The notes: generated by a model from the letters alone, not told the origin. Shown: positions 31,455 to 49,260, counted from the first letter of the stretch. The stretch is 64,000 bases of DNA from IMGVR_UViG_3300037245_001419:147778-211777; one strand, 5' to 3'. Translations and numbers: made by a program.

Positions 31455-31562
31455 GGCACTCCTACCGTTATCTATTAATAAATATAGCTTATTAGCTAAT
31501 CATTGTCAACAAAAAAGAGGTACACTAATTAATTTTAGTGTACCTCTTTTCGGTCGGAGTTA
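31455..31562 (-). repeat. modular intergenic cassette: stop-CTCCGACCG, terminator, promoter, RBS
   Basis: near-identical copies at 33779-33879 and 36351-36461; variants at 35255-35358 and 38188-38303. Confidence 0.85.
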
Positions 31563-31772
31563 AAAATCCTCTATTTCGCTGTCTGTGCCTTCTAAAGCTT
31601 CTTGTATAATATGATATTCGTTTTCACTCATACCTTTATCGACACCCAAGGTTTTAAACACTTCAGCCATTGATAACATTTCATCAATACAAGAATTGCG
31701 TAAAAATTCTTTTGCGTGTCCACACTCTTCCAAAGACTCTTTAACAGATTCTACTAGTTCAGCTCTATTCAT
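31560..31772 (-). CDS. small acidic hypothetical protein
   Basis: followed by the cassette terminator. Confidence 0.7.
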   Translation of the reverse strand: MNRAELVESVKESLEECGHAKEFLRNSCIDEMLSMAEVFKTLGVDKGMSENEYHIIQEALEGTDSEIEDF

Positions 31773-31881
31773 TAGTTTTTCCAATTTTTAAAAAGTTTAT
31801 GTGCAATGAGTTGAATTGCAAAACCTGATACAATACCTAGTATAGTAAAGGTTACATCTACATGATACCCAAACAATTCCA

Positions 31882-32229
31882 TTATTTTTTAAATTGGTAA
31901 CAAATATTATTAGCTACTGTTAAACCGCCACATTTAATAGGGTCTCTAACAAGTTTACAACAACCTTGATAAATAAGCTTGTCTAGTATCCGTTTGATAC
32001 TTTTCTTCTTATTCTGTATGAGAGCACTCTCCATATAAGTAGGGACTTTAGGCTCTTTAAAGATAATACCAAATATTTGGCTGATTGAAAAGATAGTATC
32101 ATTCGTAAAGATGATAGTTCTTACTTTTCCGTACAATTCATCATTTGGTATACGATAACTCAAATTAACTTGACTATCCTTAAAGTATTGATCCTTGACA
32201 TAATTAGGTTTTGTTTGTTCTTTATGCAT
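31882..32229 (-). CDS. hypothetical protein (possibly winged-helix)
   Basis: own promoter and AGGAG; SIKRILDKLIYQG. Confidence 0.7.
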   Translation of the reverse strand: MHKEQTKPNYVKDQYFKDSQVNLSYRIPNDELYGKVRTIIFTNDTIFSISQIFGIIFKEPKVPTYMESALIQNKKKSIKRILDKLIYQGCCKLVRDPIKCGGLTVANNICYQFKK

Positions 32230-32295
32230 TGTTACTCCTTACCGTTTCTATTATTAAAGATAGTTAATTAGCTATCCTTTGTCAACAACTAAATG

Positions 32296-32709
32296 TTAAA
32301 ATCTTAAAGAGTATTTGAAAATGTCAGCTATGCTGTTAAGCTTATTTGATTTTTTGGTTAGGTCTTCAATAGTTATCAATTGATTACATAGTTCAGATAA
32401 ATCGGTTGGTGAAATATCGTCGGTTTCATATAAAGTAATATTCTCTTTATACAGATCTCTCAGTTTTGCAAATGATAAAAATATTGTGGCATGTTTCGCT
32501 GTTATATGCTTTATGATTTGCTTATCACCCTGCATAATTTGAAAGAATGGGTATATTAAATCTACACCAAAATGAGACTCTTCTATTAAAACATGGACAC
32601 CGTCAAAGTATTCTCCAATGATAGCATATTTGAAAGAAGGTGTTATATCGACTACTTCATTGCAGTAAACTATTGCGTAACACTTCTTAATTTCAAATGT
32701 TTTTTTCAT
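32296..32709 (-). CDS. hypothetical protein
   Basis: own promoter. Confidence 0.7.
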   Translation of the reverse strand: MKKTFEIKKCYAIVYCNEVVDITPSFKYAIIGEYFDGVHVLIEESHFGVDLIYPFFQIMQGDKQIIKHITAKHATIFLSFAKLRDLYKENITLYETDDISPTDLSELCNQLITIEDLTKKSNKLNSIADIFKYSLRF

Positions 32710-32773
32710 AAATTATTCCTACAGTTTAACTATTATAAAGATAGATAGTTAATTAGTTATGTACTGTCAACAA

Positions 32774-33058
32774 CTAAAGTAATATTTTAACAATGTAAAA
32801 TACAATTTTACGTTTAAAGTCAATTGGGTATAAATGGTTGATTGTAATTAACACCATGCTTTTATAGCTCTCTTTTATGGTAATGGTCGGTGCACAAACA
32901 TGATGATCTTTTACAATATCGTTTCTAATGAGTGTTATACCTGCTTGAACGTCCGATAAATAAGAGCCTTCTTTAGTTTGTGCCTTAACCAGTTTAGGTG
33001 CTTTACGGTCTCTGTGAGCTGTTTTAATTGCCTGTATAATGTTCTTAATAATATCCAT
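32774..33058 (-). CDS. hypothetical protein
   Basis: stop TAG inside TACTTTAGTT. Confidence 0.65.
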   Translation of the reverse strand: MDIIKNIIQAIKTAHRDRKAPKLVKAQTKEGSYLSDVQAGITLIRNDIVKDHHVCAPTITIKESYKSMVLITINHLYPIDFKRKIVFYIVKILL

Positions 33059-33132
33059 GTTTACCTATAAAGAAACTGAAGTATACTATAAACGGAATAA
33101 CATATAGTATACTTCAGTCGGTCGGGTCGGAG

Positions 33133-33768
33133 TTAATATTGTGATTTGCCTGTAACAATGTTTCTTATCGTTTCATTTTGGGTTAGATCAGGTTCTGCTG
33201 TATCAATTAAACCCCACCATGATCCAAACTTAGTCTCTAAAATTATTTCGTTGTGTTCCTTGAGTGCCTTGAGTATGTGGTCACTAACTAAATACCATCG
33301 CTTAACCGTGTAACTTTCTGAATCTAGACCCTTTAGAGTGGTTAGTTTGTCTTCTATCGTGGATTCAATATCCTCTTTTTCATCTAAACAAGTTCTTACA
33401 TTTGAAACGTCTTCAAGTAATTGTGTTAACTTGTCATCATTGGTCATAGTAGGTTCAATACAGTCCTCAATAGCTTCTAAATCGCTCTTCAGTTGATATA
33501 CTTCAGTTGATACATTGTCTAAATCCTGTACGTACTGTTCAATCAAATCTGTAACGTCATCATTGCTGAGTTGTTCACCTTCCCACATATAATACTCAGT
33601 ATTGATAGCGTCATTTTCTAAATGTGGATTACAATTAATTAAATATTCAACTAAAGTACTTTGATCTTTGTAAACCTCTTCTCTGATAAGTTCATAAATC
33701 CTGTAAACAATGTTACTCTCTTTAAATGATGCTTTAACTACTGCATTGCTTTCGTTTGTATGTGACAT
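33133..33768 (-). CDS. conserved phage protein with coiled-coil insert
   Basis: WYLVSD...WWG motif; GGAG RBS before MSHTN. Confidence 0.75.
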   Translation of the reverse strand: MSHTNESNAVVKASFKESNIVYRIYELIREEVYKDQSTLVEYLINCNPHLENDAINTEYYMWEGEQLSNDDVTDLIEQYVQDLDNVSTEVYQLKSDLEAIEDCIEPTMTNDDKLTQLLEDVSNVRTCLDEKEDIESTIEDKLTTLKGLDSESYTVKRWYLVSDHILKALKEHNEIILETKFGSWWGLIDTAEPDLTQNETIRNIVTGKSQY

Positions 33769-33876
33769 AATTTTCTCCAACTCTTAACCTGTATTAAATA
33801 TAGCTAATTAGTTAACCCCTGTCAACAAAAAAAGAGATACACCAAAATTAATTAGTGTACCTCTTTTCGGTCGGAG

Positions 33877-34188
33877 TTATAGTCTTTCGTAATTTTCAAT
33901 CTCACCATTTGAGACATAAAATTTAATTCTGTCAATCTCTTTTTTAGTTTCTTCAATACCAATACCCATAACTAAATTATCAGAGTAGTTTTTGAGGATT
34001 GCTACAATATACTTTAGTTTTTTGTTTAGCTTGTCGGTATCTCTTAACAATATTTCATCTTGTTCCAGTACATTAAATTGTTTACCTTCTGAAATAGTTG
34101 TATTAATTGTTTCTTGATTTATAGCTATACTACATTGCAATTCACAAATTAAATCTATTGCTGTTCTATTCGCTTTAATGCTACTCAT
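33877..34188 (-). CDS. hypothetical protein
   Basis: AGGAG-tgccaaac-ATG leader. Confidence 0.75.
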   Translation of the reverse strand: MSSIKANRTAIDLICELQCSIAINQETINTTISEGKQFNVLEQDEILLRDTDKLNKKLKYIVAILKNYSDNLVMGIGIEETKKEIDRIKFYVSNGEIENYERL

Positions 34189-34250
34189 GTTTGGCACTCC
34201 TACCGTTATCTATTATTAAATATAGCTTATTAACTAAAGTATGTCAACCC

Positions 34251-34640
34251 TTATTGTGATTTGTGACATACTAAACAAATATTATGACCTTCAATATAGA
34301 TAAAACGTCTAGGGGGACACGTACACATTTTTCTAGCTTCCGCTTCCATCTCTCTAGCTTGTTTAATTAGCTTTTGTGCAGTAACAAACATCCCTTTAAT
34401 TTTATTAGCTTTATCGTCTGTCATTTCACGTTTAAGCCATACTTCAGTTTGATTCTCTATTATGTCAATAACAGATAAACGTATACCCATACTATCATCA
34501 TCAACCGTTACACTGTCAACATCTTGTCTATCAACATCTAACTCTAAGTTAAGATCATTATATACTTCTCTTAAGTGCATAGCTAAATCATGTTTGGCTA
34601 TATCGGGGTAGTTTAACGGTAATACTATAGTTAAATTCAT
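34251..34640 (-). CDS. hypothetical protein with C-terminal Zn finger
   Basis: MCTCP...ICLVC. Confidence 0.75.
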   Translation of the reverse strand: MNLTIVLPLNYPDIAKHDLAMHLREVYNDLNLELDVDRQDVDSVTVDDDSMGIRLSVIDIIENQTEVWLKREMTDDKANKIKGMFVTAQKLIKQAREMEAEARKMCTCPPRRFIYIEGHNICLVCHKSQ

Positions 34641-34656
34641 TCGTTGCTCCTACCGT

Positions 34657-34848
34657 TTAATCTGCAAAATTTGCTGTTATGGTATTACATTCAATATCGA
34701 TTGTGATTTCAGTAAAGCCTAAACCTTTAACATAGCCTTGATAAGTAGGTTTTTCTTTAAACTTTTCTACCGCTTCTTTACAAGTTTTACGTTGTTCAGT
34801 TGAGCACAAATATTCACCGTTCTTAAAGATGTTTATTTTTCTAGCCAT
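34657..34848 (-). CDS. hypothetical protein
   Basis: own promoter and GGAG. Confidence 0.75.
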   Translation of the reverse strand: MARKINIFKNGEYLCSTEQRKTCKEAVEKFKEKPTYQGYVKGLGFTEITIDIECNTITANFAD

Positions 34849-34891
34849 TATTTACTCCAATTCTTAACCTGTATTAAAGATAGTTAATTAA

Positions 34892-35251
34892 CTAAGCACT
34901 GTCAACAATAAAAGGTTTAAATTCACAAATATATTCTTTTTTAACCTCTTCAACTAAAGTCAAAAGCTCATTACTAAAGTAAGTACTATCATTTTGAGCC
35001 ATTGAGTCAAGTGCCTTGACAAATGTCAAAATAATTTGATCTTTGGTTGTGATACTTTTTCCAACTTCTAAAATACTTGTCTTAGTAGCAAGCAATAAAT
35101 CTAAAACAGTGCTCTCCAGATTCTTACTGATAATATCATTAATATTAATATCGTCATACTTTTCAGAAAATCTTAGTATACAAGATATACCACTAATAGA
35201 ATTGCTAATATGTGAACCACAATTAGAGTCACTGATTGAACCAATATTCAT
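34892..35251 (-). CDS. hypothetical protein
   Basis: own promoter and GGAG. Confidence 0.7.
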   Translation of the reverse strand: MNIGSISDSNCGSHISNSISGISCILRFSEKYDDININDIISKNLESTVLDLLLATKTSILEVGKSITTKDQIILTFVKALDSMAQNDSTYFSNELLTLVEEVKKEYICEFKPFIVDSA

Positions 35252-35355
35252 AATATACTCCCTGTATTAAATATAGTTAATTAACTAAGCAATGTCAACA
35301 AAAACTGAAGTATACCAAAAATAAATTAGTATACTTCAGTTTAGGCGGTTTGGAG

Positions 35356-36063
35356 TTATTCTTCTATTACTAACTGCATCACTTTAGCAAGTTTCAAAGA
35401 TTGAGATACTGATAGCTTAGTATTGTAAACCTCAATCTTGATAGTGTCATCTTTAACGTGAATACATAAAGAATTATTTTCATCTGAGTAATAATAATTT
35501 TTGTGTTCAATGTATCTACCATTGGGAAAAGCTATTGTAAGAGCCTCAACCGTTTCGGTCTTGAAATTTTTGATTTTAAGAGCTTCCTGCTCCTGTTTTT
35601 CTTTTACGTCCAGTTCCCATTGATTTTCTCTATCTAACCATGTACACAAATCTGTAAGCTTTGTTTTAAGGGTAACAAGATTTTTAAGAAACAAATTGAT
35701 GGTTTTAGGTCGTTCTTCTATTTCGTCACTGTATTGTTTTGAGTTGTTATTGAATTTAGCAACCCGATACAATGTAAACCTGGGGAATTGTTGACACGCA
35801 CAAAAGAACTTATACTTACCATCTAAGACAAGTTCGTTTGAGTTGTCATTGTATTTTGGATTGTTTAACGTGCTTTCAATGGTAGTGAAAAATTGACTAA
35901 AGAATTGTCTGTATACTTCATTTTGTTCTAGTTCGCATAAATTATCCCAAACTCTCATTGAAGGATTTTTCACTAAATACTCAGCAATATCCGAGCGGTT
36001 TGGATATTTTTTAGTCATCATGTGAATTTTATTGACAGAAAGAATAGTTTCAAAAGATCTCAT
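35356..36063 (-). CDS. hypothetical protein
   Basis: AGGAG-tgccaaac-ATG leader. Confidence 0.75.
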   Translation of the reverse strand: MRSFETILSVNKIHMMTKKYPNRSDIAEYLVKNPSMRVWDNLCELEQNEVYRQFFSQFFTTIESTLNNPKYNDNSNELVLDGKYKFFCACQQFPRFTLYRVAKFNNNSKQYSDEIEERPKTINLFLKNLVTLKTKLTDLCTWLDRENQWELDVKEKQEQEALKIKNFKTETVEALTIAFPNGRYIEHKNYYYSDENNSLCIHVKDDTIKIEVYNTKLSVSQSLKLAKVMQLVIEE

Positions 36064-36141
36064 GTTTGGCACTCCTACCGTTTATCTATTAATAAATATA
36101 GCTTATTAATTAATACCTGTCAACAACTAAATCACTTTAGT

Positions 36142-36348
36142 TTATAATATTTCTTGTCTTATTATTTGATGCAATGTATTGTAGTCTCCTTTTCTATACC
36201 TTGCATCCGTATACAAAACCCCTTTGACTTTTCTTTTTGCCTCATGGTCATTATCAGCCATAAATGGTATTATGGTGTTTTTACTGACATTACCACCCAT
36301 TACAACATCAAATTCTACAATATTGTATGTTAATTCATAGTGATTCAT
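36142..36348 (-). CDS. hypothetical protein
   Basis: cassette leader. Confidence 0.75.
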   Translation of the reverse strand: MNHYELTYNIVEFDVVMGGNVSKNTIIPFMADNDHEAKRKVKGVLYTDARYRKGDYNTLHQIIRQEIL

Positions 36349-36458
36349 GTTTGGCGCTCCTACCGTTATCTATTATTAAATATAGTTAATTAACTAACCC
36401 TTGTCAACAAAAAAAGAGATACACCAAAATTAATTAGTGCACCTCTTTTCGGTCGGAG

Positions 36459-36746
36459 TTAAAAGTGTAAAAATAGTTTTGTTGTTTGCTCAAATGTACT
36501 AACCAATTGATCATTATAGATATTTTCAAATCTATCAACTATCGGAGCGTTTTTGCCATGAATTTTAATGAAGTCGATATCATATAAATCCATGCCATTT
36601 AAAGTTATTTTACAGTAGTTTGAGTGACGACTACCCTTGAATCTAAACATTAGGGAGTTATCATCTTTTAAGAATTGTTTCACCCCCAAGAAGTGACTAA
36701 TTCTTGATCCACCCAATTGCTCTAAAATTGTTTCTGCTACTTCCAT
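36459..36746 (-). CDS. conserved phage/MGE hypothetical protein
   Basis: TILEQLGG...DLYDI...IYNDQL...FEQTT motif. Confidence 0.8.
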   Translation of the reverse strand: MEVAETILEQLGGSRISHFLGVKQFLKDDNSLMFRFKGSRHSNYCKITLNGMDLYDIDFIKIHGKNAPIVDRFENIYNDQLVSTFEQTTKLFLHF

Positions 36747-36799
36747 TTGGTACTCCTACCGTTAACTTATATTAAATATAGTTAATTAACTAAAGTATG

Positions 36800-37213
36800 T
36801 CAAGCGTTTTTTAATGCAAAGTAAATTAAATCTTCAATAGTTTTGCAGTCCTCTATTAATGAGTAGATAGTGTGATTAATATCACTACTACTTATACCTT
36901 GACCACTACCCTCAAAATCGCTTTCAAGTTGTTTTGATGCAATGTCACGTATTGCTGTTTGTATTATCTTATTTGATGATCTATAGAGCTTAAAAACACG
37001 TTTCCAATTTTCGGCGTGTGTTAATTCTTTAACAGGTCTTACAATATCACAAGTGATGCATTCACTCATTACTTCTTTAGGAAATGACTCTGTATTAAAC
37101 ATTTGTCCAACAAAATACTTTTTTATTTCAAAATCTGAACTATCACCATTAACTGAAGTTTTCCAACTGTGACCATTTTCACACGTAAGTGTTGCACTAA
37201 TAAGATTTGACAT
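36800..37213 (-). CDS. hypothetical protein
   Basis: cassette leader. Confidence 0.75.
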   Translation of the reverse strand: MSNLISATLTCENGHSWKTSVNGDSSDFEIKKYFVGQMFNTESFPKEVMSECITCDIVRPVKELTHAENWKRVFKLYRSSNKIIQTAIRDIASKQLESDFEGSGQGISSSDINHTIYSLIEDCKTIEDLIYFALKNA

Positions 37214-37286
37214 ATTTGGTACTCCTACCGTTTATCTATTAATAAATATAGCTTATTAATTAACCGTTGTCAATGGATTATACAAA

Positions 37287-37544
37287 TTAATAATTAATTT
37301 TATAACCTTTTCTTAAAATTATATCTCTAACCAATTCCCTGTCTATTGTATCACCATCAAAATCTAGGTCGGGTAGTTCTTCAGCTCTAATTTCAATAGC
37401 TTCTCTAATATCACTATCTTTTAAACCGTCAATTGGATAAATCCCCTCTATAGAGTAAAAGCTATTAAAGTATTCTATAAACTTCTTTATACAATGTTCT
37501 TTTTTATCAGCCTCTGTCATACCATTCAAAATCTCTAAAGTCAT
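37287..37544 (-). CDS. hypothetical protein
   Basis: FDGDTIDRELVRDI; own promoter. Confidence 0.75.
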   Translation of the reverse strand: MTLEILNGMTEADKKEHCIKKFIEYFNSFYSIEGIYPIDGLKDSDIREAIEIRAEELPDLDFDGDTIDRELVRDIILRKGYKINY

Positions 37545-37589
37545 AATTGTAACCCGTTAGTTAACTATATAATAAATATAGCTTATTAA

Positions 37590-37850
37590 TTAACCTTTGT
37601 CAATAAGTTTCTGTATTTCGTCGGTAATAATAATATTATTTTGTGACCTGTTTTTTTCCCAATGTGCACTGTCTGGCAATACACTATTTTTACCGTCATT
37701 TGTCCATATAGTATATTTTGACTTAAAAGGTTTTTCCTTTAAAACAATATTACCTTGTAATGGGAATGTAACCTCATTGTTACAACTATTAAATTTATTG
37801 TACCCATGGATAATAACTCTTTTGCCACCAACTGTTTTAGTCTCAATCAT
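37590..37850 (-). CDS. hypothetical protein
   Basis: operon context. Confidence 0.7.
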   Translation of the reverse strand: MIETKTVGGKRVIIHGYNKFNSCNNEVTFPLQGNIVLKEKPFKSKYTIWTNDGKNSVLPDSAHWEKNRSQNNIIITDEIQKLIDKG

Positions 37851-37923
37851 AATAAGCCTTTAAAAAAACTGAAGTACACTATACCAATGTCAAAAAATAT
37901 AATGTACTTCAGTCGGGTCGGAG

Positions 37924-38187
37924 TTAAATTACTTTAGTTAGTGTATCGGTAAGGTACTGATTAAAATCCTTTACACTTATATCCATTAATGAGCCGTCAA
38001 CTTCAACCCCGTCAACATAACAACGTTGCACCCAAGTTCTATAACACTTCATAACAACATTTTTACCGTTCAACTCAAATTTTGGATAATACCAACTATC
38101 TTTGTCCTGTTTTCTCACGGTGTTAATGTGCTTTACCGCATCAATTACTGTTTTAATCGGGGTCAATGTAATTGCTTCTTTAATCAT
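37924..38187 (-). CDS. hypothetical protein
   Basis: AGGAG-tgccaaac-ATG leader. Confidence 0.75.
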   Translation of the reverse strand: MIKEAITLTPIKTVIDAVKHINTVRKQDKDSWYYPKFELNGKNVVMKCYRTWVQRCYVDGVEVDGSLMDISVKDFNQYLTDTLTKVI

Positions 38188-38300
38188 GTTTGGCACTCCT
38201 ACCGTTATCTATTAATAAATATAGCTAATTAACTAAGTACTGTCAACAAAAAAACTGAAGTATACCAAATAAATTCAATATACTTCAGTTTGGGTCGGAG

Positions 38301-38714
38301 TTAATTTCTAACTTCAAATCCATTTGTTGATGGATTATATTCCATACGCTTAATATTTTTATGTTTAAGGTAGTTTAATAGCATTCCAAACTGTGTAGTC
38401 GCTTTATATTTAGCAGTGCAAGGGTGTTGCATTGCTTTGATCTTAAAGATCTCAAACCCTCTTATAAGCTTCTGAAAATCCACTATCTTATCATCACTAT
38501 AATCAAATAATACTTTAGGGGCGTAAGGCATAAAATAGTCATCACTTGATTGAAACGTAAATTTGCATATTTCTACTAAACAGTGACGATTTTTATCAAA
38601 TGATCTAATTAAAATAGAGTGCTCTCTAATATCCTTAAGAAATCGATTACTATGTGTACTACTTCCATAACTGAAGTAAATTTTCCCTAATTTCAATTGA
38701 ACATAATCTAACAT
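38301..38714 (-). CDS. hypothetical protein
   Basis: cassette leader. Confidence 0.7.
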   Translation of the reverse strand: MLDYVQLKLGKIYFSYGSSTHSNRFLKDIREHSILIRSFDKNRHCLVEICKFTFQSSDDYFMPYAPKVLFDYSDDKIVDFQKLIRGFEIFKIKAMQHPCTAKYKATTQFGMLLNYLKHKNIKRMEYNPSTNGFEVRN

Positions 38715-38785
38715 TTTTTGGCACTCCTACCGTTTATCTATTAATAAATATAGCTAATTAACTAAAGTATGTCAACCCCTAAACG

Positions 38786-39109
38786 CTAATAACCTTTATT
38801 TTTTAACATGGTTGAAATACCACCTGTATTAGCTAAACCTTCTTTTTTAATTAGACCGTTAATACTTTTATTTAATCCTGTTATAGCTTGCTTTGCTTGA
38901 CTTTCTATTATAGCCGTAAATACTTCAGTTATAACCGTTTTTTTACGCTTTCCTACTTTGCCATTTCGAGCCATTTCAGCTACTCTATAAGCATAAAAAT
39001 CATCAAGCTCCTTTATATCACCACACTCATTAAGATACTTTGTAGATACCTTATTAGCCTTTAAAACTACTGTTATGTTCTTGAATACTTTAGTTTGTAT
39101 AGTAACCAT
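38786..39109 (-). CDS. basic hypothetical protein
   Basis: operon context. Confidence 0.7.
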   Translation of the reverse strand: MVTIQTKVFKNITVVLKANKVSTKYLNECGDIKELDDFYAYRVAEMARNGKVGKRKKTVITEVFTAIIESQAKQAITGLNKSINGLIKKEGLANTGGISTMLKNKGY

Positions 39110-39118
39110 AAATAACCC

Positions 39119-39352: not shown

Positions 39353-39364
39353 TTTAAGCCCCTT

Positions 39365-41741: not shown

Positions 41742-41829
41742 TTGTCTTAATCAAACCATGGCTTAATAAAATCTTGTCTTAATCAAACCATGGCTTAATA
41801 GTGAGCTGTTTAGGTAGTGACCTGTTTAG
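41742..41829. repeat. intergenic direct repeats
   Basis: 27-bp TTGTCTTAATCAAACCATGGCTTAATA twice (41742, 41774), then AGTGASCTGTTTAG twice. Confidence 0.85.
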
Positions 41830-41832
41830 CTG

Positions 41833-42159
41833 TTATTCGTCGTCGTCGTCGGTTTCTGTGTACCCACAAAAGAATAATCTTTGTAGTGCACTATCTTCGC
41901 TTAACATTGGAGCCATTCCAGCCCCTTTATTATCACCATCTAAAACTTTTGAAAATTCATAAGAATCAAGCTCTATAATATTTTCATCGTTAGCATTTTC
42001 TAGTATGTGTTCAGCAATAGAGTAGTTACCCTTAACAAAATTAGCCCATTCAATTTCACCTTCAGTCAATTTGTAGGTAACATTTCCCTCAAATAGACCA
42101 CAAACCTCTTCAGTTTCCATGCCTAAAATCTCTTCACTTGTATAAATTTTCGTATCCAT
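41833..42159 (-). CDS. acidic hypothetical protein, paralog of 40916-41236
   Basis: YTSEEILGM...YKLT...SALQRLF. Confidence 0.8.
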   Translation of the reverse strand: MDTKIYTSEEILGMETEEVCGLFEGNVTYKLTEGEIEWANFVKGNYSIAEHILENANDENIIELDSYEFSKVLDGDNKGAGMAPMLSEDSALQRLFFCGYTETDDDDE

Positions 42160-42254
42160 TCTTGACTCCCTGTGACCTGTATTAAATATAACTCTTTAGT
42201 GAATACCTGTCAATAAGATATTAACTAAAGAGCTAAATAAATTAGCTCTTTACT

Positions 42255-42620
42255 TTAGTTTACATTCAAGTGTTTTAAAATACGTTTCAATTGTGATTTG
42301 TTAAAAACCTCTAAATGTATACAATAAGTGACCTCTTCAGATTTTTCATAATCTTCTGTAAAGCTTTGACCATAAAAGGAAGGTTTTTTATCATCTATTT
42401 GTATATTAGATTGATTTGAAATTTGTAAATCTCTACAATATTCTAAAAACGTTTTTACATTTGACTCAATAGCATAAAATTCCTTATCATCTACTAAATC
42501 AATACTATCATTAATCGGTTTATGTATAGGTGATGGAATGTAACTAAATCCATTTTCTGAAGTTTCGCCATTTTCAGCGCTTTCTGGTGTAACATAATCA
42601 TATGTTATATAATATTTCAT
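42255..42620 (-). CDS. conserved phage hypothetical protein
   Basis: ITYDYVTPESAENG; own promoter. Confidence 0.75.
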   Translation of the reverse strand: MKYYITYDYVTPESAENGETSENGFSYIPSPIHKPINDSIDLVDDKEFYAIESNVKTFLEYCRDLQISNQSNIQIDDKKPSFYGQSFTEDYEKSEEVTYCIHLEVFNKSQLKRILKHLNVN

Positions 42621-42930
42621 TGCGTTAACTCCTTAACTTATCTATGAACTAAGATAGCTTATTATATAACACCCGTCAACAATTAAATACATAAAAGATT
42701 AAATAAATTAAATACTGTTTTAAACACCCTATAAGCCCCGATAATTTAAGCCATACAATCACACTAGAAAACAAAAACACCCCGTTTAAATAGCTTTAAA
42801 ACACATATAAACAGTAGTTAACCACCCTATAACACCCACAACATCACCTGGTTAATGTACAAAATACACTAAGGTATATAGACGTAAAAAAGCCCCTGTT
42901 TAGGGGGCTTAATATACTTTAGTTTGGGGC

Positions 42931-43476
42931 TTATAGTGTACCCTCTAACATTTTTCCCTTAATAGTCACTATATTATCAATAGATTCATAATTTAGAGCG
43001 TTAAAAAGTCTATTACAATTACTTTTTAATGACATAATAGCCCGTTTACATTTAGCTTGATAAGCAATATTACTTGATTCGCTTATTTCTTCAGTAAGTT
43101 GAATAATAGTATTAATTGCAACCAAATTAGAGTTAATACATTCAAGCTTAGAAGGTTTAAACACTTCAGTAACTAAATTATTAACATAGCGGACAAATAA
43201 GCGGTATATGTCAAATACCCGAAAATTTAAGCGGTATTGGTTCCCGTTGCTATCTAAAGCCCCTGCATTATGGCACGGGTACATACTTACACAATTTTGT
43301 ACTTTGTATTGATCCCATAAATCTTGGGGTATGGCGTAATCAATTGTATATTTTTCAAAACCTAATATTTTTACTATTTCGCATTTACTCATTCCATTTA
43401 ATAAAGCAACCTGTGTTGCTTCCTTTGTGTAATCGGCCTGTTTATATCGTGTTGCTACTGATTTTAAATCTGTCAT
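42931..43476 (-). CDS. hypothetical protein
   Basis: own promoter and AAGGAG. Confidence 0.75.
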   Translation of the reverse strand: MTDLKSVATRYKQADYTKEATQVALLNGMSKCEIVKILGFEKYTIDYAIPQDLWDQYKVQNCVSMYPCHNAGALDSNGNQYRLNFRVFDIYRLFVRYVNNLVTEVFKPSKLECINSNLVAINTIIQLTEEISESSNIAYQAKCKRAIMSLKSNCNRLFNALNYESIDNIVTIKGKMLEGTL

Positions 43477-43679
43477 TTCGTTAACTCCTTAACTTATCTA
43501 TGAACTAATATAGTTCATTAACTAAAGTATGTCAACACCTAAACACAAAAAAGAATAAATAAATTGCTTTAGCTTTTAAACACCCTATAAGCTCACTATA
43601 TACAAGGTGATACCATATCACCAAACACAAAAAAAGCCCCTTGATAGGGGGCTTATAACGGCTTAAATAGTACTTTAGT

Positions 43680-43922
43680 TTATACTAAATGTATCCTAAA
43701 GTTTGCTTTACTTTTATAATAATATTTATCGGGGTAATTTTCAGCTTTAACTTCCCTATGTTCTTTTAACATTGCTAAAACTTCAGTCTCAATATGTGCA
43801 CCTATACAATTTTGATATGTAGCATCGCCCACTAAATGCGGTATATTCTTTTTAATCACATATACGGTAAACTCTGTAAATTTGTCGGTCACTTTTGTGA
43901 TACTAACTATAAAATTTTTCAT
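43680..43922 (-). CDS. hypothetical protein
   Basis: own promoter and AAGGAG. Confidence 0.75.
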   Translation of the reverse strand: MKNFIVSITKVTDKFTEFTVYVIKKNIPHLVGDATYQNCIGAHIETEVLAMLKEHREVKAENYPDKYYYKSKANFRIHLV

Positions 43923-44068
43923 TGTCGTTAACTCCTTAACTTATCTATGAACTAAGATAGCTTATTAAATAACCGTTGTCAACATAAAAGAGAAAATACT
44001 TTAGTTTAGACAATAAAAAACCGCTCTAAATTAGAGCGGTTAACGAATCAAGATATACTTTAGTTATT

Positions 44069-44590
44069 TTAGGCTGCGATTTGTCCCTGTCTACTTTTAC
44101 CCGCTTTTGCTGAGTCGTGAACGTCTCGAATTTTATTCATTGACCAACTTTTGCGGTTATAACATTTATACCAATTCGGCTTAAACGTCCACGATTTTTT
44201 ACCTTTATTCCAATAAAAGCCTAAAGCTTTAAATAATTGGCCGTTGGTTTTATACTCTTCAATATTTGTTATATACATGTATATACCGCAAATTTCAACA
44301 TCAAAGGTAAAATTACCAAAAAACTGTTTTACTTTCTGATATACATCAAAAATCTCTAAATCCACTGAAGCGCAAAAATCCTCAAAATTCTCAATAGTTG
44401 CACTTTCAGCGCTCCCAATATCGGAACCGATATTTTTACTTAGATACTCGAATTCTGCAAAAATCGCTTGAAAATCCTTAACACTTCCCCCTTTGTCGGG
44501 GTGATTCTTAACGGCTAAATTCTTATATTCCATTTTTAATTCAAATGCATCAAATCCGCTCTTTAGTTCTGTAAAATATTTAATATCCAT
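44069..44590 (-). CDS. J-domain (DnaJ-like) protein
   Basis: ELKMEYKNLAVKNHPDKGG (HPD motif); C-terminal LGFYWNKGKKSW domain. Confidence 0.85.
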   Translation of the reverse strand: MDIKYFTELKSGFDAFELKMEYKNLAVKNHPDKGGSVKDFQAIFAEFEYLSKNIGSDIGSAESATIENFEDFCASVDLEIFDVYQKVKQFFGNFTFDVEICGIYMYITNIEEYKTNGQLFKALGFYWNKGKKSWTFKPNWYKCYNRKSWSMNKIRDVHDSAKAGKSRQGQIAA

Positions 44591-44773
44591 TTTGTTAACT
44601 CCTTAACTTATCTATGAACTAAGATAGCTTATTAATTAACACCCGTCAACATAATAATAACAATTAATAAAAATAAATTACTTTAGTTATTTGGGTTATT
44701 TAATATCGGGGGTCTCACTAAAGATACAAATAAAACCCCGATATTGTCAAGGGGTAAAGAGAAATAATATACT

Positions 44774-44992
44774 TTATACTATTTTATATGTGACTTTACG
44801 ATTATTGATATAATCTAAAGAGAAACTATTTTTATGGTTTTCTGAATACTCTATAGTATTCTCAATATGTTTATTAACCGCTTTCATCCTTAAGGTGCTA
44901 AACTCTGTTAAGGTTGCGCTTTCTTTAATGATTAAAGTATCACTATATACTTTTGAACCTTTAATCTTTGAAGTAATTCTTATAATATTCAT
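44774..44992 (-). CDS. hypothetical protein
   Basis: ORF; AACTAAAGT directly before the ATG. Confidence 0.6.
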   Translation of the reverse strand: MNIIRITSKIKGSKVYSDTLIIKESATLTEFSTLRMKAVNKHIENTIEYSENHKNSFSLDYINNRKVTYKIV

Positions 44993-45612
44993 ACTTTAGT
45001 TAATCCCTATAGTTAGTTGTATATGTGTATTAATTCGGTTTTAAGGGGTATAGAATCAACTTTACCCGATACATTAATATAGTGTGTAGATGTAATCTTT
45101 TTACCGCTTAAAGGCATGTTTAAACCCTTGAAATTTTCACCAATTGTCAACCGCTCAAAAGTCATAATAAACCCCCTATGAAACTAATCTTTCAACATAT
45201 GTTATAGTTACATTGACATATTGTGAACCTTGACAATACAACATATATAGACCATATATAGCTAAACCAATAATAATAATTCTTAACATCCTAATAACTC
45301 CTTATATCGGCTTAACATCACAGTAAGACAATTTACCCTCTAAAACGTTAATCATAGCGTTATACTCTTCATTACTGCTTATAGTCCTATAATAGTCTAA
45401 AGTAATGTTAAGGGGTAATTCTACGATATTTTGAGGTAATTCAGCAATTGTCATATTTAAACCATTTAACTAATTAACTTATCTATTATTAATAATAGCT
45501 AATTAACTAAGTTATTACAAGTAAAAAATGCATAACATACAAAATAAATACACTTTAGTTGTAAACACAAAAAAGCCCCTAAACAGGGGGCTAATCTAAA
45601 GTACTTTAGTTA

Positions 45613-45849
45613 TTATGCTAAAAAATAAGAGGGTTTTGGTAATTTAGTAAATAACTGTTTAAATTCGGATTCTGTAAAATAACCCAAATCAATTATTTTA
45701 TTAGTTTCAATATCAGTATATTGCACTCTAATGTTGTCTAAATGCAAAGTAACTCTAATTTGTATCTCATTAAAATACAAATGTTTAGGCTCAATAGTAT
45801 CTACTTTAAACCCTTGACCCTTAAACGCTGTAATTGTTAAATTTTTCAT
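45613..45849 (-). CDS. hypothetical protein
   Basis: own promoter and AAGGAG. Confidence 0.75.
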   Translation of the reverse strand: MKNLTITAFKGQGFKVDTIEPKHLYFNEIQIRVTLHLDNIRVQYTDIETNKIIDLGYFTESEFKQLFTKLPKPSYFLA

Positions 45850-45979
45850 ATTGTTAACTCCTTAACTTATCTATGAACTAATATAGTTAATAAACTAACT
45901 AAAGTCAACATAATTTACAATATATCCTTAAACACAAAAAAACCCCTAAACAGGGGCTACATAAGAGATTAAATATACT

Positions 45980-46291
45980 TTAGTTTATACGGGCGAATTC
46001 AACACTTTTTACAATTAATACGTTATCGGGGTACATTTTATTATTTGAGCTATGTTGATTATTAATAGAAGTGTACACTTCATACTCAAAGTACAATTTA
46101 AAACCGTTGGGGCCGTCCGTATAGTTAAAGAAACGTACCCCGTTTTTATTCCAGTTATCAGATAAATATTTGCTCCATAAAGCAAAAAACGTTTCTTTTT
46201 CATACAATGAATCAATAGAGGTTAAAACAGAATTTAACGACTCAATAACACCCCTATTAAAATGTACACTTTCCGACAACACAACACACAT
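45980..46291 (-). CDS. hypothetical protein
   Basis: ends AAC-TAA in the 10-mer. Confidence 0.65.
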   Translation of the reverse strand: MCVVLSESVHFNRGVIESLNSVLTSIDSLYEKETFFALWSKYLSDNWNKNGVRFFNYTDGPNGFKLYFEYEVYTSINNQHSSNNKMYPDNVLIVKSVEFARIN

Positions 46292-46805
46292 AATATAAAC
46301 CCCTATCCTTTAACGATTGACTGAAGTTGTGACGATATAGCTATATATTCAGCTACATTTTGAGGTGTACTATTTGCGATACATTCCGCTTTCAATTCGT
46401 TCTTTCTTACATTTAATTCGTTTAATTCTAAAACTGACATTTGATTAACTCCTTAATCTGTGTAACTTATCTATGAACTAAGATAGCTTATTATATAACA
46501 CCCGTCAACATAATAATGCATAAAAGATAAAATAAATTAATTTATACCCATAGACACAAAAAAAGCCCCCTACATAGTAGAGGGCAAAATAGAAACGTGA
46601 TATACTTTAGTTTATAATAAACCGTTAACCTTTGATTGATTCACCTTTGAACGGGGAGCAGTGCACAAATTGAAAGATGTAATAGATTTGCGAGCGATTG
46701 AGATTTTTTGAATAGATTTAAACATATGTGATACCTTTTAGTTATTAACTTATCTATGAACAATAATAGCTTATTCATTAATATAATACAAGGGGAAAAT
46801 ATACT

Positions 46806-46967
46806 TTAGTTATAAACAGGCTTTACATGATACCTATATGCACCATATATATTATCTAATTTATCGGCTCGATTACGGGCGGTTTTTCGTTGGTGTGATT
46901 TATATTCTTTCAATACCTTTTTTGTGTGACCATCAATCAAAGTATAGCCTATTATCTCATTACTCAT
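46806..46967 (-). CDS. small conserved phage protein
   Basis: ARNRADKLDNIYGAYRY; start moved to MSNEI. Confidence 0.7.
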   Translation of the reverse strand: MSNEIIGYTLIDGHTKKVLKEYKSHQRKTARNRADKLDNIYGAYRYHVKPVYN

Positions 46968-47082
46968 ATTATACCTACAAAGTTTATTATGTAACAAATA
47001 TAGCTTATTAACTAAAGTATAGTACATATAATTTTATTTAATCAATCGCCCCGATATACTACACAACATAAGATTATTATAG

Positions 47083-47160
47083 TATATTTAAGATACCCCA
47101 ACGGTTGACTACTATATCTCATTTCGAGAACAACGGGGAGGAGTGAAGACTATTCATTAG
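47083..47160 (+). ncRNA. candidate small RNA, copy 2
   Basis: ATACCCCAACGGTTGACTACTAT...ACGGGG...AGTGAAG...TTCATTAG shared with copy 1. Confidence 0.4.
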
Positions 47161-47232
47161 AATATAAACATATACTAATATACTTCAGTTAAAAAAAAAG
47201 CCCCGTATATACTAGGGCCTATTTACTTTAGT

Positions 47233-47478
47233 TTAAATATTATGTTTAATCTTATCTTGAGTAATTAAATTCTCAGTCATATATACACCGCTCAAAGCTT
47301 GATTCTTAAGTTCATTACTAATAAAACCGCTTTCAGCCATTACTAGTAATATCTTATCGTTAGAGCGTGAATTTATTACACGGGCCGTTAATGAAGGCCA
47401 CCGCTTATCAATACAATCATTTAAACGTCTTATATCTGCTTTTGATAACTTGATTGATTTCTTTTCTAAAACTGCCAT
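47233..47478 (-). CDS. hypothetical protein, first gene of the leftward array
   Basis: own promoter and AAGGAG. Confidence 0.75.
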   Translation of the reverse strand: MAVLEKKSIKLSKADIRRLNDCIDKRWPSLTARVINSRSNDKILLVMAESGFISNELKNQALSGVYMTENLITQDKIKHNI

Positions 47479-47539
47479 TTAATTAACTCCTTAACTTATC
47501 TATGAATAAAGATAACATATTAACTAAGATATACAAGGG

Positions 47540-49260
47540 GAAAATATACTTCAGTTACACGGGACAATCTAAAGAGATTAAACATACAATATATTAAGCC
47601 ATATAAGAGCATATACACCCACTAAAATAGATCTTTAATACCATAGGATACAAAAGCCATAAAAGAGCTTATATACACCTTAAAATAGAAACTAGATATA
47701 CTTCAGTTATAAACGCATAAACAAAACATATTATATACAAGGGAAAAACAGCGTATACTTTAGTTATTTGAGCCAGTTCTCAATGAGCACCAAAAACTAA
47801 AAAAACTAAACATAGCTAATTAACGATGCTCATAATTAGTTAATAAGCTAATAGGATATACTAGAGTTATTATAGTTACTTTAGTTATTAGACCCCCTAT
47901 GTAAACTAAAGTAAAATAAACCTTCATATAACGTACATTATGTAAACTACTCATATGTGCACTTGACAAACTCAAAAAAGTATTACATACCATATAAGAA
48001 GCAAACTAAAGTATTTTATACCGTTTTTACTCTGTCCCCACACAATCCACCAGCACAGTATATTATATAACGCTAATATAGATAGATTCGTAAGTTGTAA
48101 CCACTACAAAGATATATTCATAACCATAAGCTAAAGCACTTTAGTTTGTAACCAATACAACAAAGGAATCAATCTATATCAGTATATGCTAATATGTAAT
48201 CATACTTCAGTTGTACCCGTAACAACTTGTAATGAGTACAATGTAACATACACCACCGCCATGGTACGATGACAAGATGTAACCAATACAACTTAGTACA
48301 CACCACATATATGTAACACACTTTAGTTTGTACTCATTACAACGTAACATTGTAACCATTACATGTATACACTAAAAGAACACTAATAACTAAAGTAAAT
48401 GTCATATGTACAGTAAGGTACGAAAACTTTAGTTTCTTTAGGCGATTAAAGCTCAAAAACAGCACATTTGCGCTGACGGTACTTTCAGGCCGTGTCCTAT
48501 GTGATTATACCCAACCCCCTACAAAAGCCCTTAAGCACACCTTAAAACGTATTTAAAGAGCTATGCAACTTAGCTACAAACTAAAGTAGTATATGATGAT
48601 ATACTTACGGACTAATCAACATAAACCCTTTATGTCAATACGACAGTATGTACTTAATGTACAATATACATACAGATCTACTTTAGTTTACCATCATATT
48701 ATAATATTAGTATATCATCATACAGTCATGGATTACTTTAGTTTATTAGTATATGATGATATTAGCATACAGTGATATACTCATGCACCTATATTAGTAT
48801 ATCATAATATACTGTGTCTTGCAAACCTTAGTGTCAGACTTACACTAAGGTAGGGTCCCCAGGGGTGATGGTTTCCCCCTCCTCCACGAGAGCCAATATA
48901 AGTCTCTCAGAGGGTGGCCGACTCTATATAATTCCGTTTCTCTAAAAAAATTTTAGAATAAAAAATTACTGCAGGGGTCGATGTACAAACTAAAGTAGTT
49001 TTAGTCGCAACTGAAGTAGTTCTTATTGTTAACTGAAGTATAACATTTACTCCATTATTGCCGGATACTGGCAAATTCAGCGTAATACTTATATATCCCT
49101 TGTATTTGCTGTTTAAGACGTTTCTAAAGCAATCTAAAGATACTCACCCATCTGTATTGTAAGAACTGACTAAGGGCCTGGAAGGGTATCTAAAGTGTCT
49201 AATTCGTCTATTGCTGTCCGACATTGTCTATTGTATTAGTCTAAGGCCAAAGGAGTAGAA
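47540..49260. other. 1.7-kb non-coding repeat-rich block (candidate genome terminus or origin)
   Basis: no credible ORF; about 15 AACTRAAGTA copies, TTGTA-N5-TACAA x7, TAGTATATSAT x4, GC-rich hairpins at 48826-48925. Confidence 0.6.
48095..48364. repeat. cluster of 7 TTGTA-N5-TACAA palindromic boxes
   Basis: starts at 48095, 48146, 48211, 48227, 48277, 48328, 48350 (three with one mismatch). Confidence 0.8.

What the first reader, a model, noticed from the sequence alone, without database searches (positions are those of the whole stretch)
31455..47540. Modular stop-terminator-promoter-RBS cassettes in positional subtypes (PeSL-like gene shuffling)
Seen: at 31-38.7 kb intergenic units read (minus) TAA-CTCCGACCG, hairpin, T-run, TTGACA, palindrome, -10, ATAGATAACGGTAGGAGTGCCAAAC-ATG, with near-identical 100-bp copies at 31455, 33779 and 36351. 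At 42.6-47.5 kb a second subtype has the leader AGTTCATAGATAAGTTAAGGAGTTAA (42625, 43480, 43928, 44594, 45853, 47482) and AGCCCC/GGGGCT terminators. The conserved CTCCGACC directly after seven stop codons has no obvious promoter or terminator role. Established: promoter-stem-loop (PeSL) repeats mediate modular gene exchange in some T4-type phages. Inference: these repeats are recombination joints for gain and loss of single-gene cassettes.
Basis: partly seen in the sequence, partly recalled or inferred. Interest (0 to 1): 0.6.

Follow-up and report, generated by a model that had tools for sequence, protein, structure and literature searches.

The report
Phage promoter-terminator cassettes that shuffle genes
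A T4-like phage from marine sediment has about 46 copies of one terminator-promoter-ribosome-site unit between its small early genes, and strain comparisons show single genes gained or lost by recombination inside these units, which is the known PeSL mechanism in a new lineage.

Summary
The window is the last 64 kb of a 211,777-bp far-T4-like myovirus from marine sediment. On the minus strand, about 46 units share one layout: an optional terminator hairpin, TTGACA, four variable bases, a 16-nt palindrome, a -10 of TATATT or TATCTT, a conserved start region, a Shine-Dalgarno leader and ATG. They span window 12.5-47.5 kb, not only 31-47.5 kb. Leader subtypes are positional (Mantel p = 2e-4), and the units flank unrelated genes with no Pfam family.

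Variant strains in four other assembled samples differ from the window by single-gene or module indels and replacements. Their joints lie inside the repeats: the promoter core, the -35, the Shine-Dalgarno leader and a 10-mer. This is the signature published for PeSL elements of T4-type phages, so I call it a new member of a known kind. Circular intermediates could not be tested because the runs are held only as contigs.

Two extras are less ordinary. TAA-CTCCGACC always directly follows a stop codon and is complementary to the leader of its own transcript, so it may be a 3' anti-Shine-Dalgarno clamp. AACTAAAGTA is about 100-fold over-represented on both strands and sits at three strain joints.

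The parts
31450..31562 (-). Full unit: TAA stop, CTCCGACC, terminator hairpin, TTGACA at 31509, palindromic spacer, TATATT, type A leader and ATG of the 67-aa gene
33056..33135 (-). Terminator-only module: TAA, CTCCGACC with a repeated CCGAC, and a hairpin of the ACTGAAGTATAC family
33766..33879 (-). Full unit: TAA-CTCCGACC, hairpin, promoter at 33825 and type B leader. Its upstream 88 nt are 94% identical to the unit at 36407, but the leader differs (mosaic unit).
34186..34247 (-). Promoter plus type A leader before the 103-aa gene. This promoter and the 129-aa gene upstream of it (34251-34640) are absent from strain L022.
34647..34657 (-). Shine-Dalgarno leader AACGGTAGGAG of the 129-aa gene. 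It is one of the two 11-nt repeats (the other at 34197-34207) between which strain L022 has its crossover.
34846..34905 (-). Promoter plus type B leader. Strain L021 has a different sequence (a terminator arm) immediately upstream of its -35.
35249..35358 (-). Full unit: TAA, variant CTCCAAACC, hairpin, promoter at 35298 and a short type B-like leader
36061..36123 (-). Promoter plus type A leader of the 235-aa gene
36346..36461 (-). Full unit: TAA-CTCCGACC, hairpin, promoter at 36407 and type A leader
36744..36803 (-). Promoter plus type A leader of the 95-aa gene. The spacer begins with TACTTTAGTT.
37211..37273 (-). Promoter plus type A leader. It is the downstream partner of the crossover that removes the 85-aa cassette in strain L013.
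37274..37603 (-). 330-bp single-gene cassette, measured from one promoter to the next, holding the 85-aa gene at 37287-37544. It is present in the window and absent from strain L013. The crossover zone is the 26-nt identical stretch at 37570-37595 and 37240-37265.
37848..37926 (-). Terminator-only module: TAA-CTCCGACC and a hairpin, followed by the ATG of the 86-aa gene
38185..38303 (-). Full unit: TAA-CTCCGACC, an 18-bp hairpin, promoter at 38246 and type A leader. Strain L013 has an extra CCGAC here.
38712..38775 (-). Promoter plus type A leader of the 137-aa gene
42618..42933 (-). Type C unit: stop, AACTAAAGTA, GC-rich terminator at 42890-42910, AT-rich stretch, promoter at 42679 and the GTTAAGGAGTTAAC leader
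43474..43682 (-). Type C unit: terminator at 43634-43654, promoter at 43535 and leader
43920..44071 (-). Type C unit: terminator at 44019-44041, AACTAAAGTA, promoter at 43982 and leader
44588..44776 (-). Type C unit with promoter at 44649. In strain L043 the gene downstream of its leader is replaced, and the 72-aa gene upstream (44774-44992) is missing.
45563..45613 (-). 51-nt terminator module (AACTAAAGTA plus a GC-rich hairpin and T-run) flanked by AACTAAAGT direct repeats. It is absent from strain L019.
45847..45982 (-). Type C unit: terminator at 45941-45958, promoter at 45908 and leader
46438..46585 (-). Type C unit with a longer leader: terminator at 46565-46585 and promoter at 46508
12467..30654 (-). 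Extension outside the finding: about 22 more promoter units of the same family, mostly type D leaders. It includes the 1.75-kb segment 20327-22080 that the close relative L001 lacks.

Best explanation
These are PeSL-type composite regulatory cassettes of a far-T4-like myovirus. Each unit is the punctuation between small early genes of unknown function. It comprises an intrinsic terminator (in about 40% of units), a host sigma-70-type early promoter whose conservation reaches well beyond the two hexamers, a 5' UTR of about 23 nt with a strong Shine-Dalgarno sequence, and the start codon.

The same 60-110 nt recur about 46 times in direct orientation, 0.3-1.3 kb apart. The phage has its own UvsX-type recombinase. 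The units therefore also serve as portable homology. Unequal or inter-genome homologous recombination, or short-homology recombination, between two units deletes, inserts or swaps exactly one promoter-to-promoter gene cassette and leaves one hybrid but working unit.

What is shown: the layout, the copy number, the positional subtypes, the lack of relatedness among the flanked genes, and crossovers inside the units in natural strain variants. What is inferred: promoter and terminator activity, early timing, the recombination pathway, and the direction of each event (gain or loss).

A sub-claim I rate at about 0.35. TAA-CTCCGACC acts in the RNA as a 3' anti-Shine-Dalgarno sequence. It pairs with the leader of its own transcript, and with the next leader in read-through RNA, and it lies within the footprint of the terminating ribosome.
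For: Layout. The unit reads as described. The consensus of 39 in-register units has no information in the four bases after the -35 but strong conservation on both sides of them. That pattern argues for functional constraint rather than recent copying alone.

Promoter and terminator likeness. The top 15 sigma-70 matches are all on the minus strand. Terminator-like sites number 20 against 6.2 +/- 3.1 in shuffles. Hairpins of -12 to -20 kcal/mol abut 10 of the -35 hexamers.

Not gene duplication. Only 3 weak paralogue pairs occur among 80 predicted proteins. 20 of 20 cassette proteins reach no Pfam cut-off.

Positional subtypes. Unit similarity falls with distance (Spearman -0.34, permutation p = 2e-4).

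T4 kinship and recombinase. The portal and DNA polymerase are 31-33% identical to gp20 and gp43 of T4-like phages. TATAAATA lies upstream of 8 of 17 large late genes. A RecA/UvsX-like gene lies next to the polymerase gene.

Strain evidence.
- L013 is 97.5-99.8% identical and lacks exactly one 330-bp cassette. Upstream of a 26-nt shared promoter stretch it equals unit 37603, and downstream it equals unit 37273.
- The exact 85-aa protein is not on record in that sample. Contig depth in run X2 dips at 37200-37599.
- L022 joins the 3' end of a divergent 63-aa gene allele directly to the 103-aa gene through the shared AACGGTAGGAG.
- L021 breaks at the TTGACA of unit 34905.
- L043 and L041 show a gene replacement and an allele replacement bounded by a conserved leader and a terminator.
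- L001 has a 1.75-kb indel with one end at a Shine-Dalgarno sequence.
- Units 33825 and 36407 share 94% of their upstream 88 nt but carry different leaders. This is a past crossover between the -10 and the Shine-Dalgarno sequence, the same zone as in RB49 mini-circles.

The published PeSL definition and behaviour match.

Anti-Shine-Dalgarno sub-claim.
- All 7 motifs directly follow a TAA stop.
- Duplex energy with the leader of its own transcription unit is -10.8 to -14.3 kcal/mol in 6 of 6. A shuffled motif does as well with p = 0.0005, and 0 of 73 other post-stop 12-mers do as well.
- The ensemble pairing probability of GGAG with CUCC is at least 0.93 in 6 of 9 whole predicted transcripts.
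- Only 2 other CTCC occur in 7.6 kb of sense strand.
Against: - No transcript data exist, so promoter strength, timing and start sites are predicted only.
- All relatives are metagenome contigs, and assemblers can mis-join at repeats. The L021 and L022 junctions rest on only 20 and 51 nt at contig ends, and the window-type arrangement co-occurs in the same samples.
- Only about eight events were seen. Several have just one end in a promoter unit, while the other end lies in a signal-peptide coding region or at the 10-mer.
- Crossover homologies of 7-11 nt are short for RecA-type recombination.
- No circular intermediate could be sought.
- The strong conservation of the spacer palindrome could reflect a regulator's binding site and owe nothing to recombination.
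- For the anti-Shine-Dalgarno idea, the pairing has a constant G-A mismatch and shows no compensatory covariation. One transcript gives a pairing probability of 0.05. The CCGAC copy number varies between strains.
Confidence: 0.8

Rival explanations
1. The units are only regulatory. On this view the phage needs a uniform set of early promoters and leaders, perhaps bound by a dimeric phage regulator at the 16-nt palindrome and at the dyad over the -10 and start site. Recombination at them would be an incidental by-product or an assembly artefact with no evolutionary importance.
For: The four bases after the -35 vary freely while the palindrome, the -10 and the start region are conserved. That points to selection on function. 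A second promoter class in the same genome (TTGACT-N17-TATAAT, no palindrome) serves the replication genes, so the palindrome marks a regulatory class. Logan contigs break at every repeat, and their 'joints' are cross-mapping.
Against: The junction contigs carry strain-specific SNPs on both sides. The shared stretches (11-26 nt) are shorter than usual assembly k-mers. Indel lengths equal exact promoter-to-promoter or leader-to-leader distances. The same behaviour was shown experimentally for PeSLs. Regulatory function and recombination are not exclusive.
Confidence: 0.12
2. A site-specific cassette system, integron-like or driven by a homing or nicking endonuclease. A dedicated enzyme would recognise a short site (CTCCGACC after the stop, or the 10-mer AACTAAAGTA) and move cassettes.
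For: AACTAAAGTA has 161 copies against about 1.7 expected on both strands together. It lies exactly at the L019 and L043 indel joints and at the edge of the L001 divergent patch. CTCCGACC sits at a fixed place at the 3' ends of genes.
Against: Crossovers lie at different places within the units: the promoter core, the -35, the Shine-Dalgarno leader and the 10-mer. A site-specific enzyme would not produce that spread. No strain joint lies at CTCCGACC. No integrase was looked for or seen in the window's large ORFs. The 10-mer is spread over the whole genome, coding regions included, on both strands, so it is not a cassette boundary as such.
Confidence: 0.06
3. The repeats are left-overs of tandem duplications of a gene together with its promoter, followed by divergence of the genes.
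For: Neighbouring units are more alike than distant ones. Three weak paralogue pairs exist.
Against: The flanked proteins are otherwise unrelated while the units stay 80-94% identical. Neutral decay would erase 60-nt non-coding repeats before it erased protein similarity.
Confidence: 0.02

Closest known systems
PeSL (promoter-early stem-loop) elements of T4-type phages: RB49/phi1, T4/PST and KVP40/nt-1 (Arbiol et al. 2010, PMC2839356; Comeau et al. 2014, PMC4122927)
   Same: A composite of a stem-loop just upstream of a sigma-70-like early promoter, ending in a Shine-Dalgarno sequence and start codon. The elements cluster between small ORFans in a hyperplastic region of a T4-like genome. Each lineage has its own consensus. 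Indels and replacements between close relatives have crossovers between the -10, the Shine-Dalgarno sequence and the ATG. Degraded 'half' elements also occur.
   Different: This lineage is far more distant (portal and polymerase about 32% identical to any T4-like phage). The spacer carries a near-invariant 16-nt palindrome. Leaders fall into four positional subtypes. A conserved TAA-CTCCGACC precedes seven terminators. Mini-circles, shown by inverse PCR for RB49, could not be tested here.
T4 early promoters with extended conservation, and the host-takeover module of Bacillus phage SPO1
   Same: Many strong, near-identical host-RNA-polymerase promoters with strong ribosome sites in front of short early genes.
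   Different: Those descriptions concern expression only. Here, strain comparisons add recombination at the units.
Integron gene cassettes with attC sites
   Same: Single-gene cassettes in one orientation, separated by imperfect inverted repeats at the 3' ends of genes.
   Different: Integron cassettes lack promoters and move through an integrase at one defined crossover point. Here every cassette has its own promoter and the crossover points vary. The attC core sites are not matched, by inspection only.
5'-3' UTR pairing that masks the Shine-Dalgarno sequence: S. aureus icaR (PMC3868564), B. subtilis hbs (PMC5737220), and long-range anti-SD-like sequences (PMC12697547)
   Same: A pyrimidine-rich anti-SD-like sequence far downstream in the same mRNA is complementary to the ribosome-binding site.
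   Different: Here it is a repeated module placed directly after the stop codon in seven phage transcription units. There is no experimental evidence for it.

Membership tests
PeSL elements of T4-type phages | The host genome is a T4-type myovirus | tested here: met
   gp20-like portal, gp43-like polymerase, sheath and terminase. T4 late promoter TATAAATA before 8 of 17 large late genes. UvsX-like gene. Kinship is distant, about 32% identity.
PeSL elements of T4-type phages | A sigma-70-like -35 and -10 with a spacer of about 17 nt, conserved among many copies | tested here: met
   TTGACA-N17-TATATT or TATCTT in about 46 units. Activity was not measured.
PeSL elements of T4-type phages | A stem-loop (probable terminator) just upstream of the promoter | tested here: met
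   10 of 46 units have a hairpin within 12 nt of the -35, and 9 more have one within 130 nt. The rest correspond to the published 'half' elements.
PeSL elements of T4-type phages | A Shine-Dalgarno sequence and the start codon of the downstream gene at the 3' end of the element | tested here: met
PeSL elements of T4-type phages | Clustered in hyperplastic regions among small ORFans | tested here: met
   About 80 small minus-strand ORFs in window 10-49 kb. 20 of 20 tested proteins reach no Pfam cut-off.
PeSL elements of T4-type phages | Indels and replacements between close relatives end in or next to the elements | tested here: met
   L013, L022, L021, L043, L041 and L001. The sample is small and consists of metagenome contigs only.
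PeSL elements of T4-type phages | Formation of excised mini-circles carrying one hybrid element | not testable with these tools
   The three runs that hold the sequence are kept as Logan contigs. Their 'joints' have sides of 21-42 nt and come from other copies of the repeat.
Integron cassettes | An integrase and a single defined crossover site in attC | tested here: not met
   Crossovers lie at four different places in the units. No integrase-like family appears among the window's ORFs of 250 aa or more. The genome was not scanned specifically for an integrase.
3'-UTR anti-Shine-Dalgarno regulation (icaR type) | The 3' UTR sequence is complementary to the Shine-Dalgarno sequence of the same mRNA | tested here: met
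   Duplex energies of -10.8 to -14.3 kcal/mol in 6 of 6, with shuffle p = 0.0005. Pairing probability is at least 0.93 in 6 of 9 predicted transcripts.
3'-UTR anti-Shine-Dalgarno regulation (icaR type) | The pairing forms in vivo and lowers translation or stability | not testable with these tools
   No RNA data are available. There is no covariation, because the only relatives are near-identical strains.

The most novel reading that the evidence does not exclude
Beyond being PeSLs, the cassettes may carry two undescribed signals.

1. TAA-CTCCGACC may be a portable 3' anti-Shine-Dalgarno clamp. It would close each early mRNA onto its own ribosome-binding site, and the ribosome terminating at the adjacent stop codon would open it again. 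Translation would then be self-sustaining, and untranslated or read-through RNA would stay silent.

2. AACTAAAGTA may be a recognition site for a phage DNA-binding or nicking protein. It has about 160 copies on both strands of the genome, and the promoter palindrome is built from the same half-site (AACTAA). Such a protein could both mark early promoters and seed recombination, which would explain why the 10-mer lies at three strain joints.
Probability: 0.3. Interest if true: 0.7.

Novelty: new member of a known kind. Interest (0 to 1): 0.5.

Why it matters
PeSL-mediated shuffling has so far rested on three pairs of cultured T4-type phages. Here the same layout and the same kind of crossover appear in an uncultured, very distant T4-like phage, in natural co-occurring strains from marine sediment. 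This supports the view that portable promoter-terminator punctuation is a general way for large lytic phages to gain and lose accessory genes without breaking expression.

The region also offers unusually clean natural examples, with hybrid units and single-gene indels, for studying recombination on short homology. It yields two testable side leads as well. One is a conserved post-stop anti-Shine-Dalgarno module. The other is a 10-mer about 100-fold over-represented on both strands.

Tried and rejected
- Nucleotide searches of the phage collection with 31-39 kb and 42-48 kb, in near and distant modes, found no match. The own record may be masked.
- Exact leader patterns found nothing in viral contigs. 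The core promoter pattern found one relative.
- A degenerate promoter pattern in metagenome contigs found three unrelated contigs.
- The search for related loci with the CCA-adding enzyme found only the same relative. Deeper relatives with their own unit consensus could therefore not be compared.
- Laying runs gave only Logan contigs. These break at each repeat, and the listed joints and 'goes back' records have short sides. Their loose ends match other units of the same genome. I do not count them as deletions or circles.
- Gene duplication as the source of the repeats is rejected.
- AACTAAAGTA as the late promoter is rejected. It shows no strand bias, and the late genes carry TATAAATA.
- Compensatory changes between the palindrome halves: none. 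Pair 4/11 shows T-G 14, T-A 15, C-A 5 and C-G 3.
- A RegB-type nuclease that might act on GGAG leaders gave no match, but the control genomes also gave none, so this says nothing.
- Rfam found no known RNA family in the units.
- Integron core sites around the hairpins do not fit, by inspection.

Full report
WHAT THE WINDOW IS

The window is the last 64 kb of a single 211,777-bp virus record. The record has 34.8% G+C and is 93% complete by CheckV. Public runs that hold the sequence are marine sediment metagenomes.

The genome encodes the following T4-type functions:
- a gp20-type portal, a large terminase, a tail sheath, a family B DNA polymerase, a primase, a helicase and a ribonucleotide reductase;
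- a portal and a polymerase only 31-33% identical to those of T4-like cyanophages, Pelagibacter phage and Aeromonas phages;
- the T4 late promoter TATAAATA within 100 nt upstream of 8 of 17 large late genes;
- a RecA/UvsX-like gene next to the polymerase gene.

It is therefore a very distant member of the T4 superfamily. The phage collection holds no nucleotide relative.

CHECK OF THE OBSERVATION

The second subtype is at 42.6 kb. The repeat finder returns families of 11-22 copies that include all the coordinates named.

An independent consensus scan agrees. The 15 best sigma-70 matches in 30-48.5 kb are all on the minus strand. It also finds 20 terminator-like sites against 6.2 +/- 3.1 in shuffles.

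Five corrections are needed.
1. The family is much larger than stated. About 46 units lie from window 12.5 to 47.0 kb, all on the minus strand. The rest of the genome uses a plainer class, TTGACT-N17-TATAAT, without the palindrome.
2. The '100-bp copies' are 82-94% identical, not near-identical.
3. Only 10 units have a hairpin abutting the -35, and 9 more have one within 130 nt.
4. CTCCGACC occurs six times exactly plus one variant.
5. Leaders fall into four types, not two.

ANATOMY OF THE UNITS

The consensus of 39 in-register units is TTGACA, four bases with no information, TTAgtTAATtAaCTAT, then cTT and taaTAatAgatAa. The -10 starts in the last bases of the palindrome.

The uninformative four bases sit inside otherwise strong conservation. 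That means the palindrome and the start region are under constraint and were not merely copied recently. The two halves of the palindrome do not covary. This fits a protein-binding or DNA-shape role better than a hairpin.

Leader types are positional:
- D at 12.5-32.3 kb;
- A (CGGTAGGAGTGCC) at 31.5-38.8 kb;
- B at 33.8-35.3 kb;
- C (GTTAAGGAGTTAAC) at 42.7-46.5 kb.

Similarity of the 35-nt core falls with distance (Spearman -0.34, permutation p = 2e-4).

The genes between the units are small and unrelated to each other. Only 3 weak paralogue pairs occur among 80 predicted proteins. 20 of 20 tested reach no Pfam cut-off.

TEST OF THE RECOMBINATION INFERENCE

Relatives were hard to find. One IMG/VR contig turned up. 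Several short JGI contigs came from looking up exact proteins. They are 97-100% identical to the window, so each difference can be read base by base. Differences are clustered into patches rather than spread evenly.

1. L013 (sample 3300037234) lacks exactly 330 bp holding the 85-aa gene.
   - Upstream of a 26-nt stretch shared by the promoters at 37603 and 37273 it is identical to the first unit. Downstream it is identical to the second.
   - The 85-aa protein is not on record in that sample.
   - Contig depth in run X2 dips over 37200-37599.
2. L022 (sample 3300043218) joins a divergent allele of the 3' end of the 63-aa gene directly to the leader of the 103-aa gene. The join runs through the shared AACGGTAGGAG and removes 450 bp, namely the 129-aa gene plus its downstream promoter.
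3. L021 (sample 3300043171) has a terminator arm in place of the 119-aa gene's end. The switch falls exactly at the TTGACA of unit 34905.
4. L043 lacks the 72-aa gene. After the leader of unit 44649 it has two other genes in place of the 173-aa gene. One of them is 33% identical to the window's 103-aa protein.
5. L041 carries a divergent allele, about 75% identical, of the 108-aa gene between a conserved promoter unit and a conserved terminator.
6. L019 lacks a 51-nt terminator module, has an extra small ORF, and has a patch of 76% identity.
7. L001 lacks 1.75 kb. One end is at a Shine-Dalgarno sequence. The other is followed by a divergent signal-peptide patch.

Inside the window itself, units 33825 and 36407 share 94% of their upstream 88 nt but have different leaders. 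This is a footprint of an older crossover between the -10 and the Shine-Dalgarno sequence.

This is the pattern reported for PeSL elements. Those are composite stem-loop, promoter and Shine-Dalgarno motifs between ORFans in hyperplastic regions. They show indels between close relatives, and in RB49 the mini-circle crossovers were mapped between the -10, the Shine-Dalgarno sequence and the ATG (PMC2839356, PMC4122927).

Crossover points vary within the unit. The mechanism is therefore homology-driven and not site-specific.

CAVEATS

- All relatives are metagenome contigs.
- Two junctions rest on 20 and 51 nt at contig ends. The window-type arrangement co-occurs in the same samples (L030 and L031 are 100% identical to the window).
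- Against assembly error: the shared stretches are shorter than the k-mers commonly used by assemblers (my own knowledge, not checked), and the junction contigs carry their own SNPs.
- Circular intermediates could not be sought. The three runs are held as Logan contigs, which break at each repeat. Their 'joints' have sides of 21-42 nt, and the loose ends match other copies of the unit.

THE CTCCGACC MOTIF

All seven copies directly follow a TAA stop. If ORFs entered the module in random frames, the chance of that is (1/3)^7. The copies precede hairpins of two different sequence families. The motif is therefore tied to the stop codon, not to a particular terminator.

It is complementary to the type A and type B leaders.
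- Duplex energies with the leader of its own transcription unit are -10.8 to -14.3 kcal/mol in 6 of 6.
- The seventh unit starts at promoter 32285, whose leader is CGGTAAGGAGT.
- A shuffled motif does as well in 0.05% of trials. None of 73 other post-stop 12-mers does.

I folded whole predicted transcripts of 350-1077 nt in the ensemble. Each ran from a start site assumed about 7 nt after the -10 to past the terminator hairpin. The GGAG:CUCC pairing has probability at least 0.93 in 6 of 9, 0.55-0.68 in two, and 0.05 in one. In read-through RNA the motif pairs with the next leader in 4 of 7 units.

Apart from the motif, only two CTCC occur in 7.6 kb of sense strand. A looser copy follows a stop codon by 3 nt at 25874.

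Long-range anti-SD-like sequences are known to repress bacterial mRNAs (PMC3868564, PMC5737220, PMC12697547). I therefore propose, at about 0.35, that this is a 3' anti-Shine-Dalgarno clamp placed within the footprint of the terminating ribosome.

Evidence against this proposal: a constant G-A mismatch, no covariation, and a variable CCGAC copy number between strains. No strain joint lies at the motif, so it is not a recombination joint.

AN UNEXPECTED 10-MER

AACTAAAGTA occurs 79 times on the plus strand and 82 on the minus strand, against about 0.8 expected per strand. It has no flanking conservation. It occurs in coding sense (59), coding antisense (50) and intergenic DNA (52).

It is not the late promoter. 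Its reverse complement follows the -35 in 8 promoters, and the promoter palindrome is built from the same half-site.

It lies at three strain joints: the L019 terminator-module joint, the L043 72-aa gene joint, and the edge of the L001 divergent patch. I cannot explain it. It may be a protein recognition site, or simply the commonest microhomology.

VERDICT

The feature is a new, distant member of the known PeSL kind, with clean natural examples of single-cassette exchange. The anti-Shine-Dalgarno module and the 10-mer are the parts that a specialist might find new.

Noticed in passing
whole genome; densest in window 32000-64000: AACTAAAGTA occurs 79 times on the plus strand and 82 on the minus strand, against about 0.8 expected per strand. 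It has no flanking conservation and occurs in coding and non-coding DNA. It lies at three strain indel or patch joints, and its reverse complement follows the -35 in 8 promoters.
   Followed up: partly
window 22596-22717 (-): Rfam scores a tRNA at 32.3 bits over 122 nt, just above the cut-off, while ARAGORN finds none. A T-arm-like GGGTTTGAATCCC lies nearby, upstream of the promoter at 22530. It may be an odd or interrupted tRNA gene.
   Followed up: no
window 18609-19976 (-): A CCA-adding enzyme (tRNA nucleotidyltransferase) gene lies inside the early cassette array. Against the close relative L001 it carries a patch of 87 differences at 18678-19356 inside otherwise 99.8% identical DNA, which suggests allele exchange.
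   Followed up: partly
genome 9000-77000 (upstream of the window), minus strand: A second promoter class, TTGACT-N17-TATAAT without the palindrome, precedes the replication and nucleotide-metabolism genes. The phage therefore seems to have two classes of host-type promoters.
   Followed up: no
window 25871-25880 (-): A looser version of the post-stop motif (TAG, ACA, CTCC, then a hairpin of the ACTGAAGTATA family) lies outside the finding. It is complementary to the GTGGAGT leader of unit 26380.
   Followed up: partly
window 23920-24330: Internal tandem-like repeats inside the 159-aa ORF (self-hits offset by about 45 and 156 nt, 72-79% identical, seen when comparing L001 with the window).
   Followed up: no
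JGI contig Ga0484852_0000002 (L011, L012, L014): A 248,963-bp contig from sample 3300043172 is 100% identical over window 29365-50471 but is about 37 kb longer than this 211,777-bp record. The record may be incomplete, or the contig may include terminal redundancy.
   Followed up: no
window 20008-20253 and 21767-22072 (-): Two small genes with lipoprotein or signal-peptide-like N-termini. The signal-peptide part of the first is about 65% identical between strains while the flanks are 99% identical.
   Followed up: partly
window 11612-12469 (-): A 285-aa protein with a DUF1281_C (Api92-like ferredoxin-like) domain, E = 1.3e-15.
   Followed up: no
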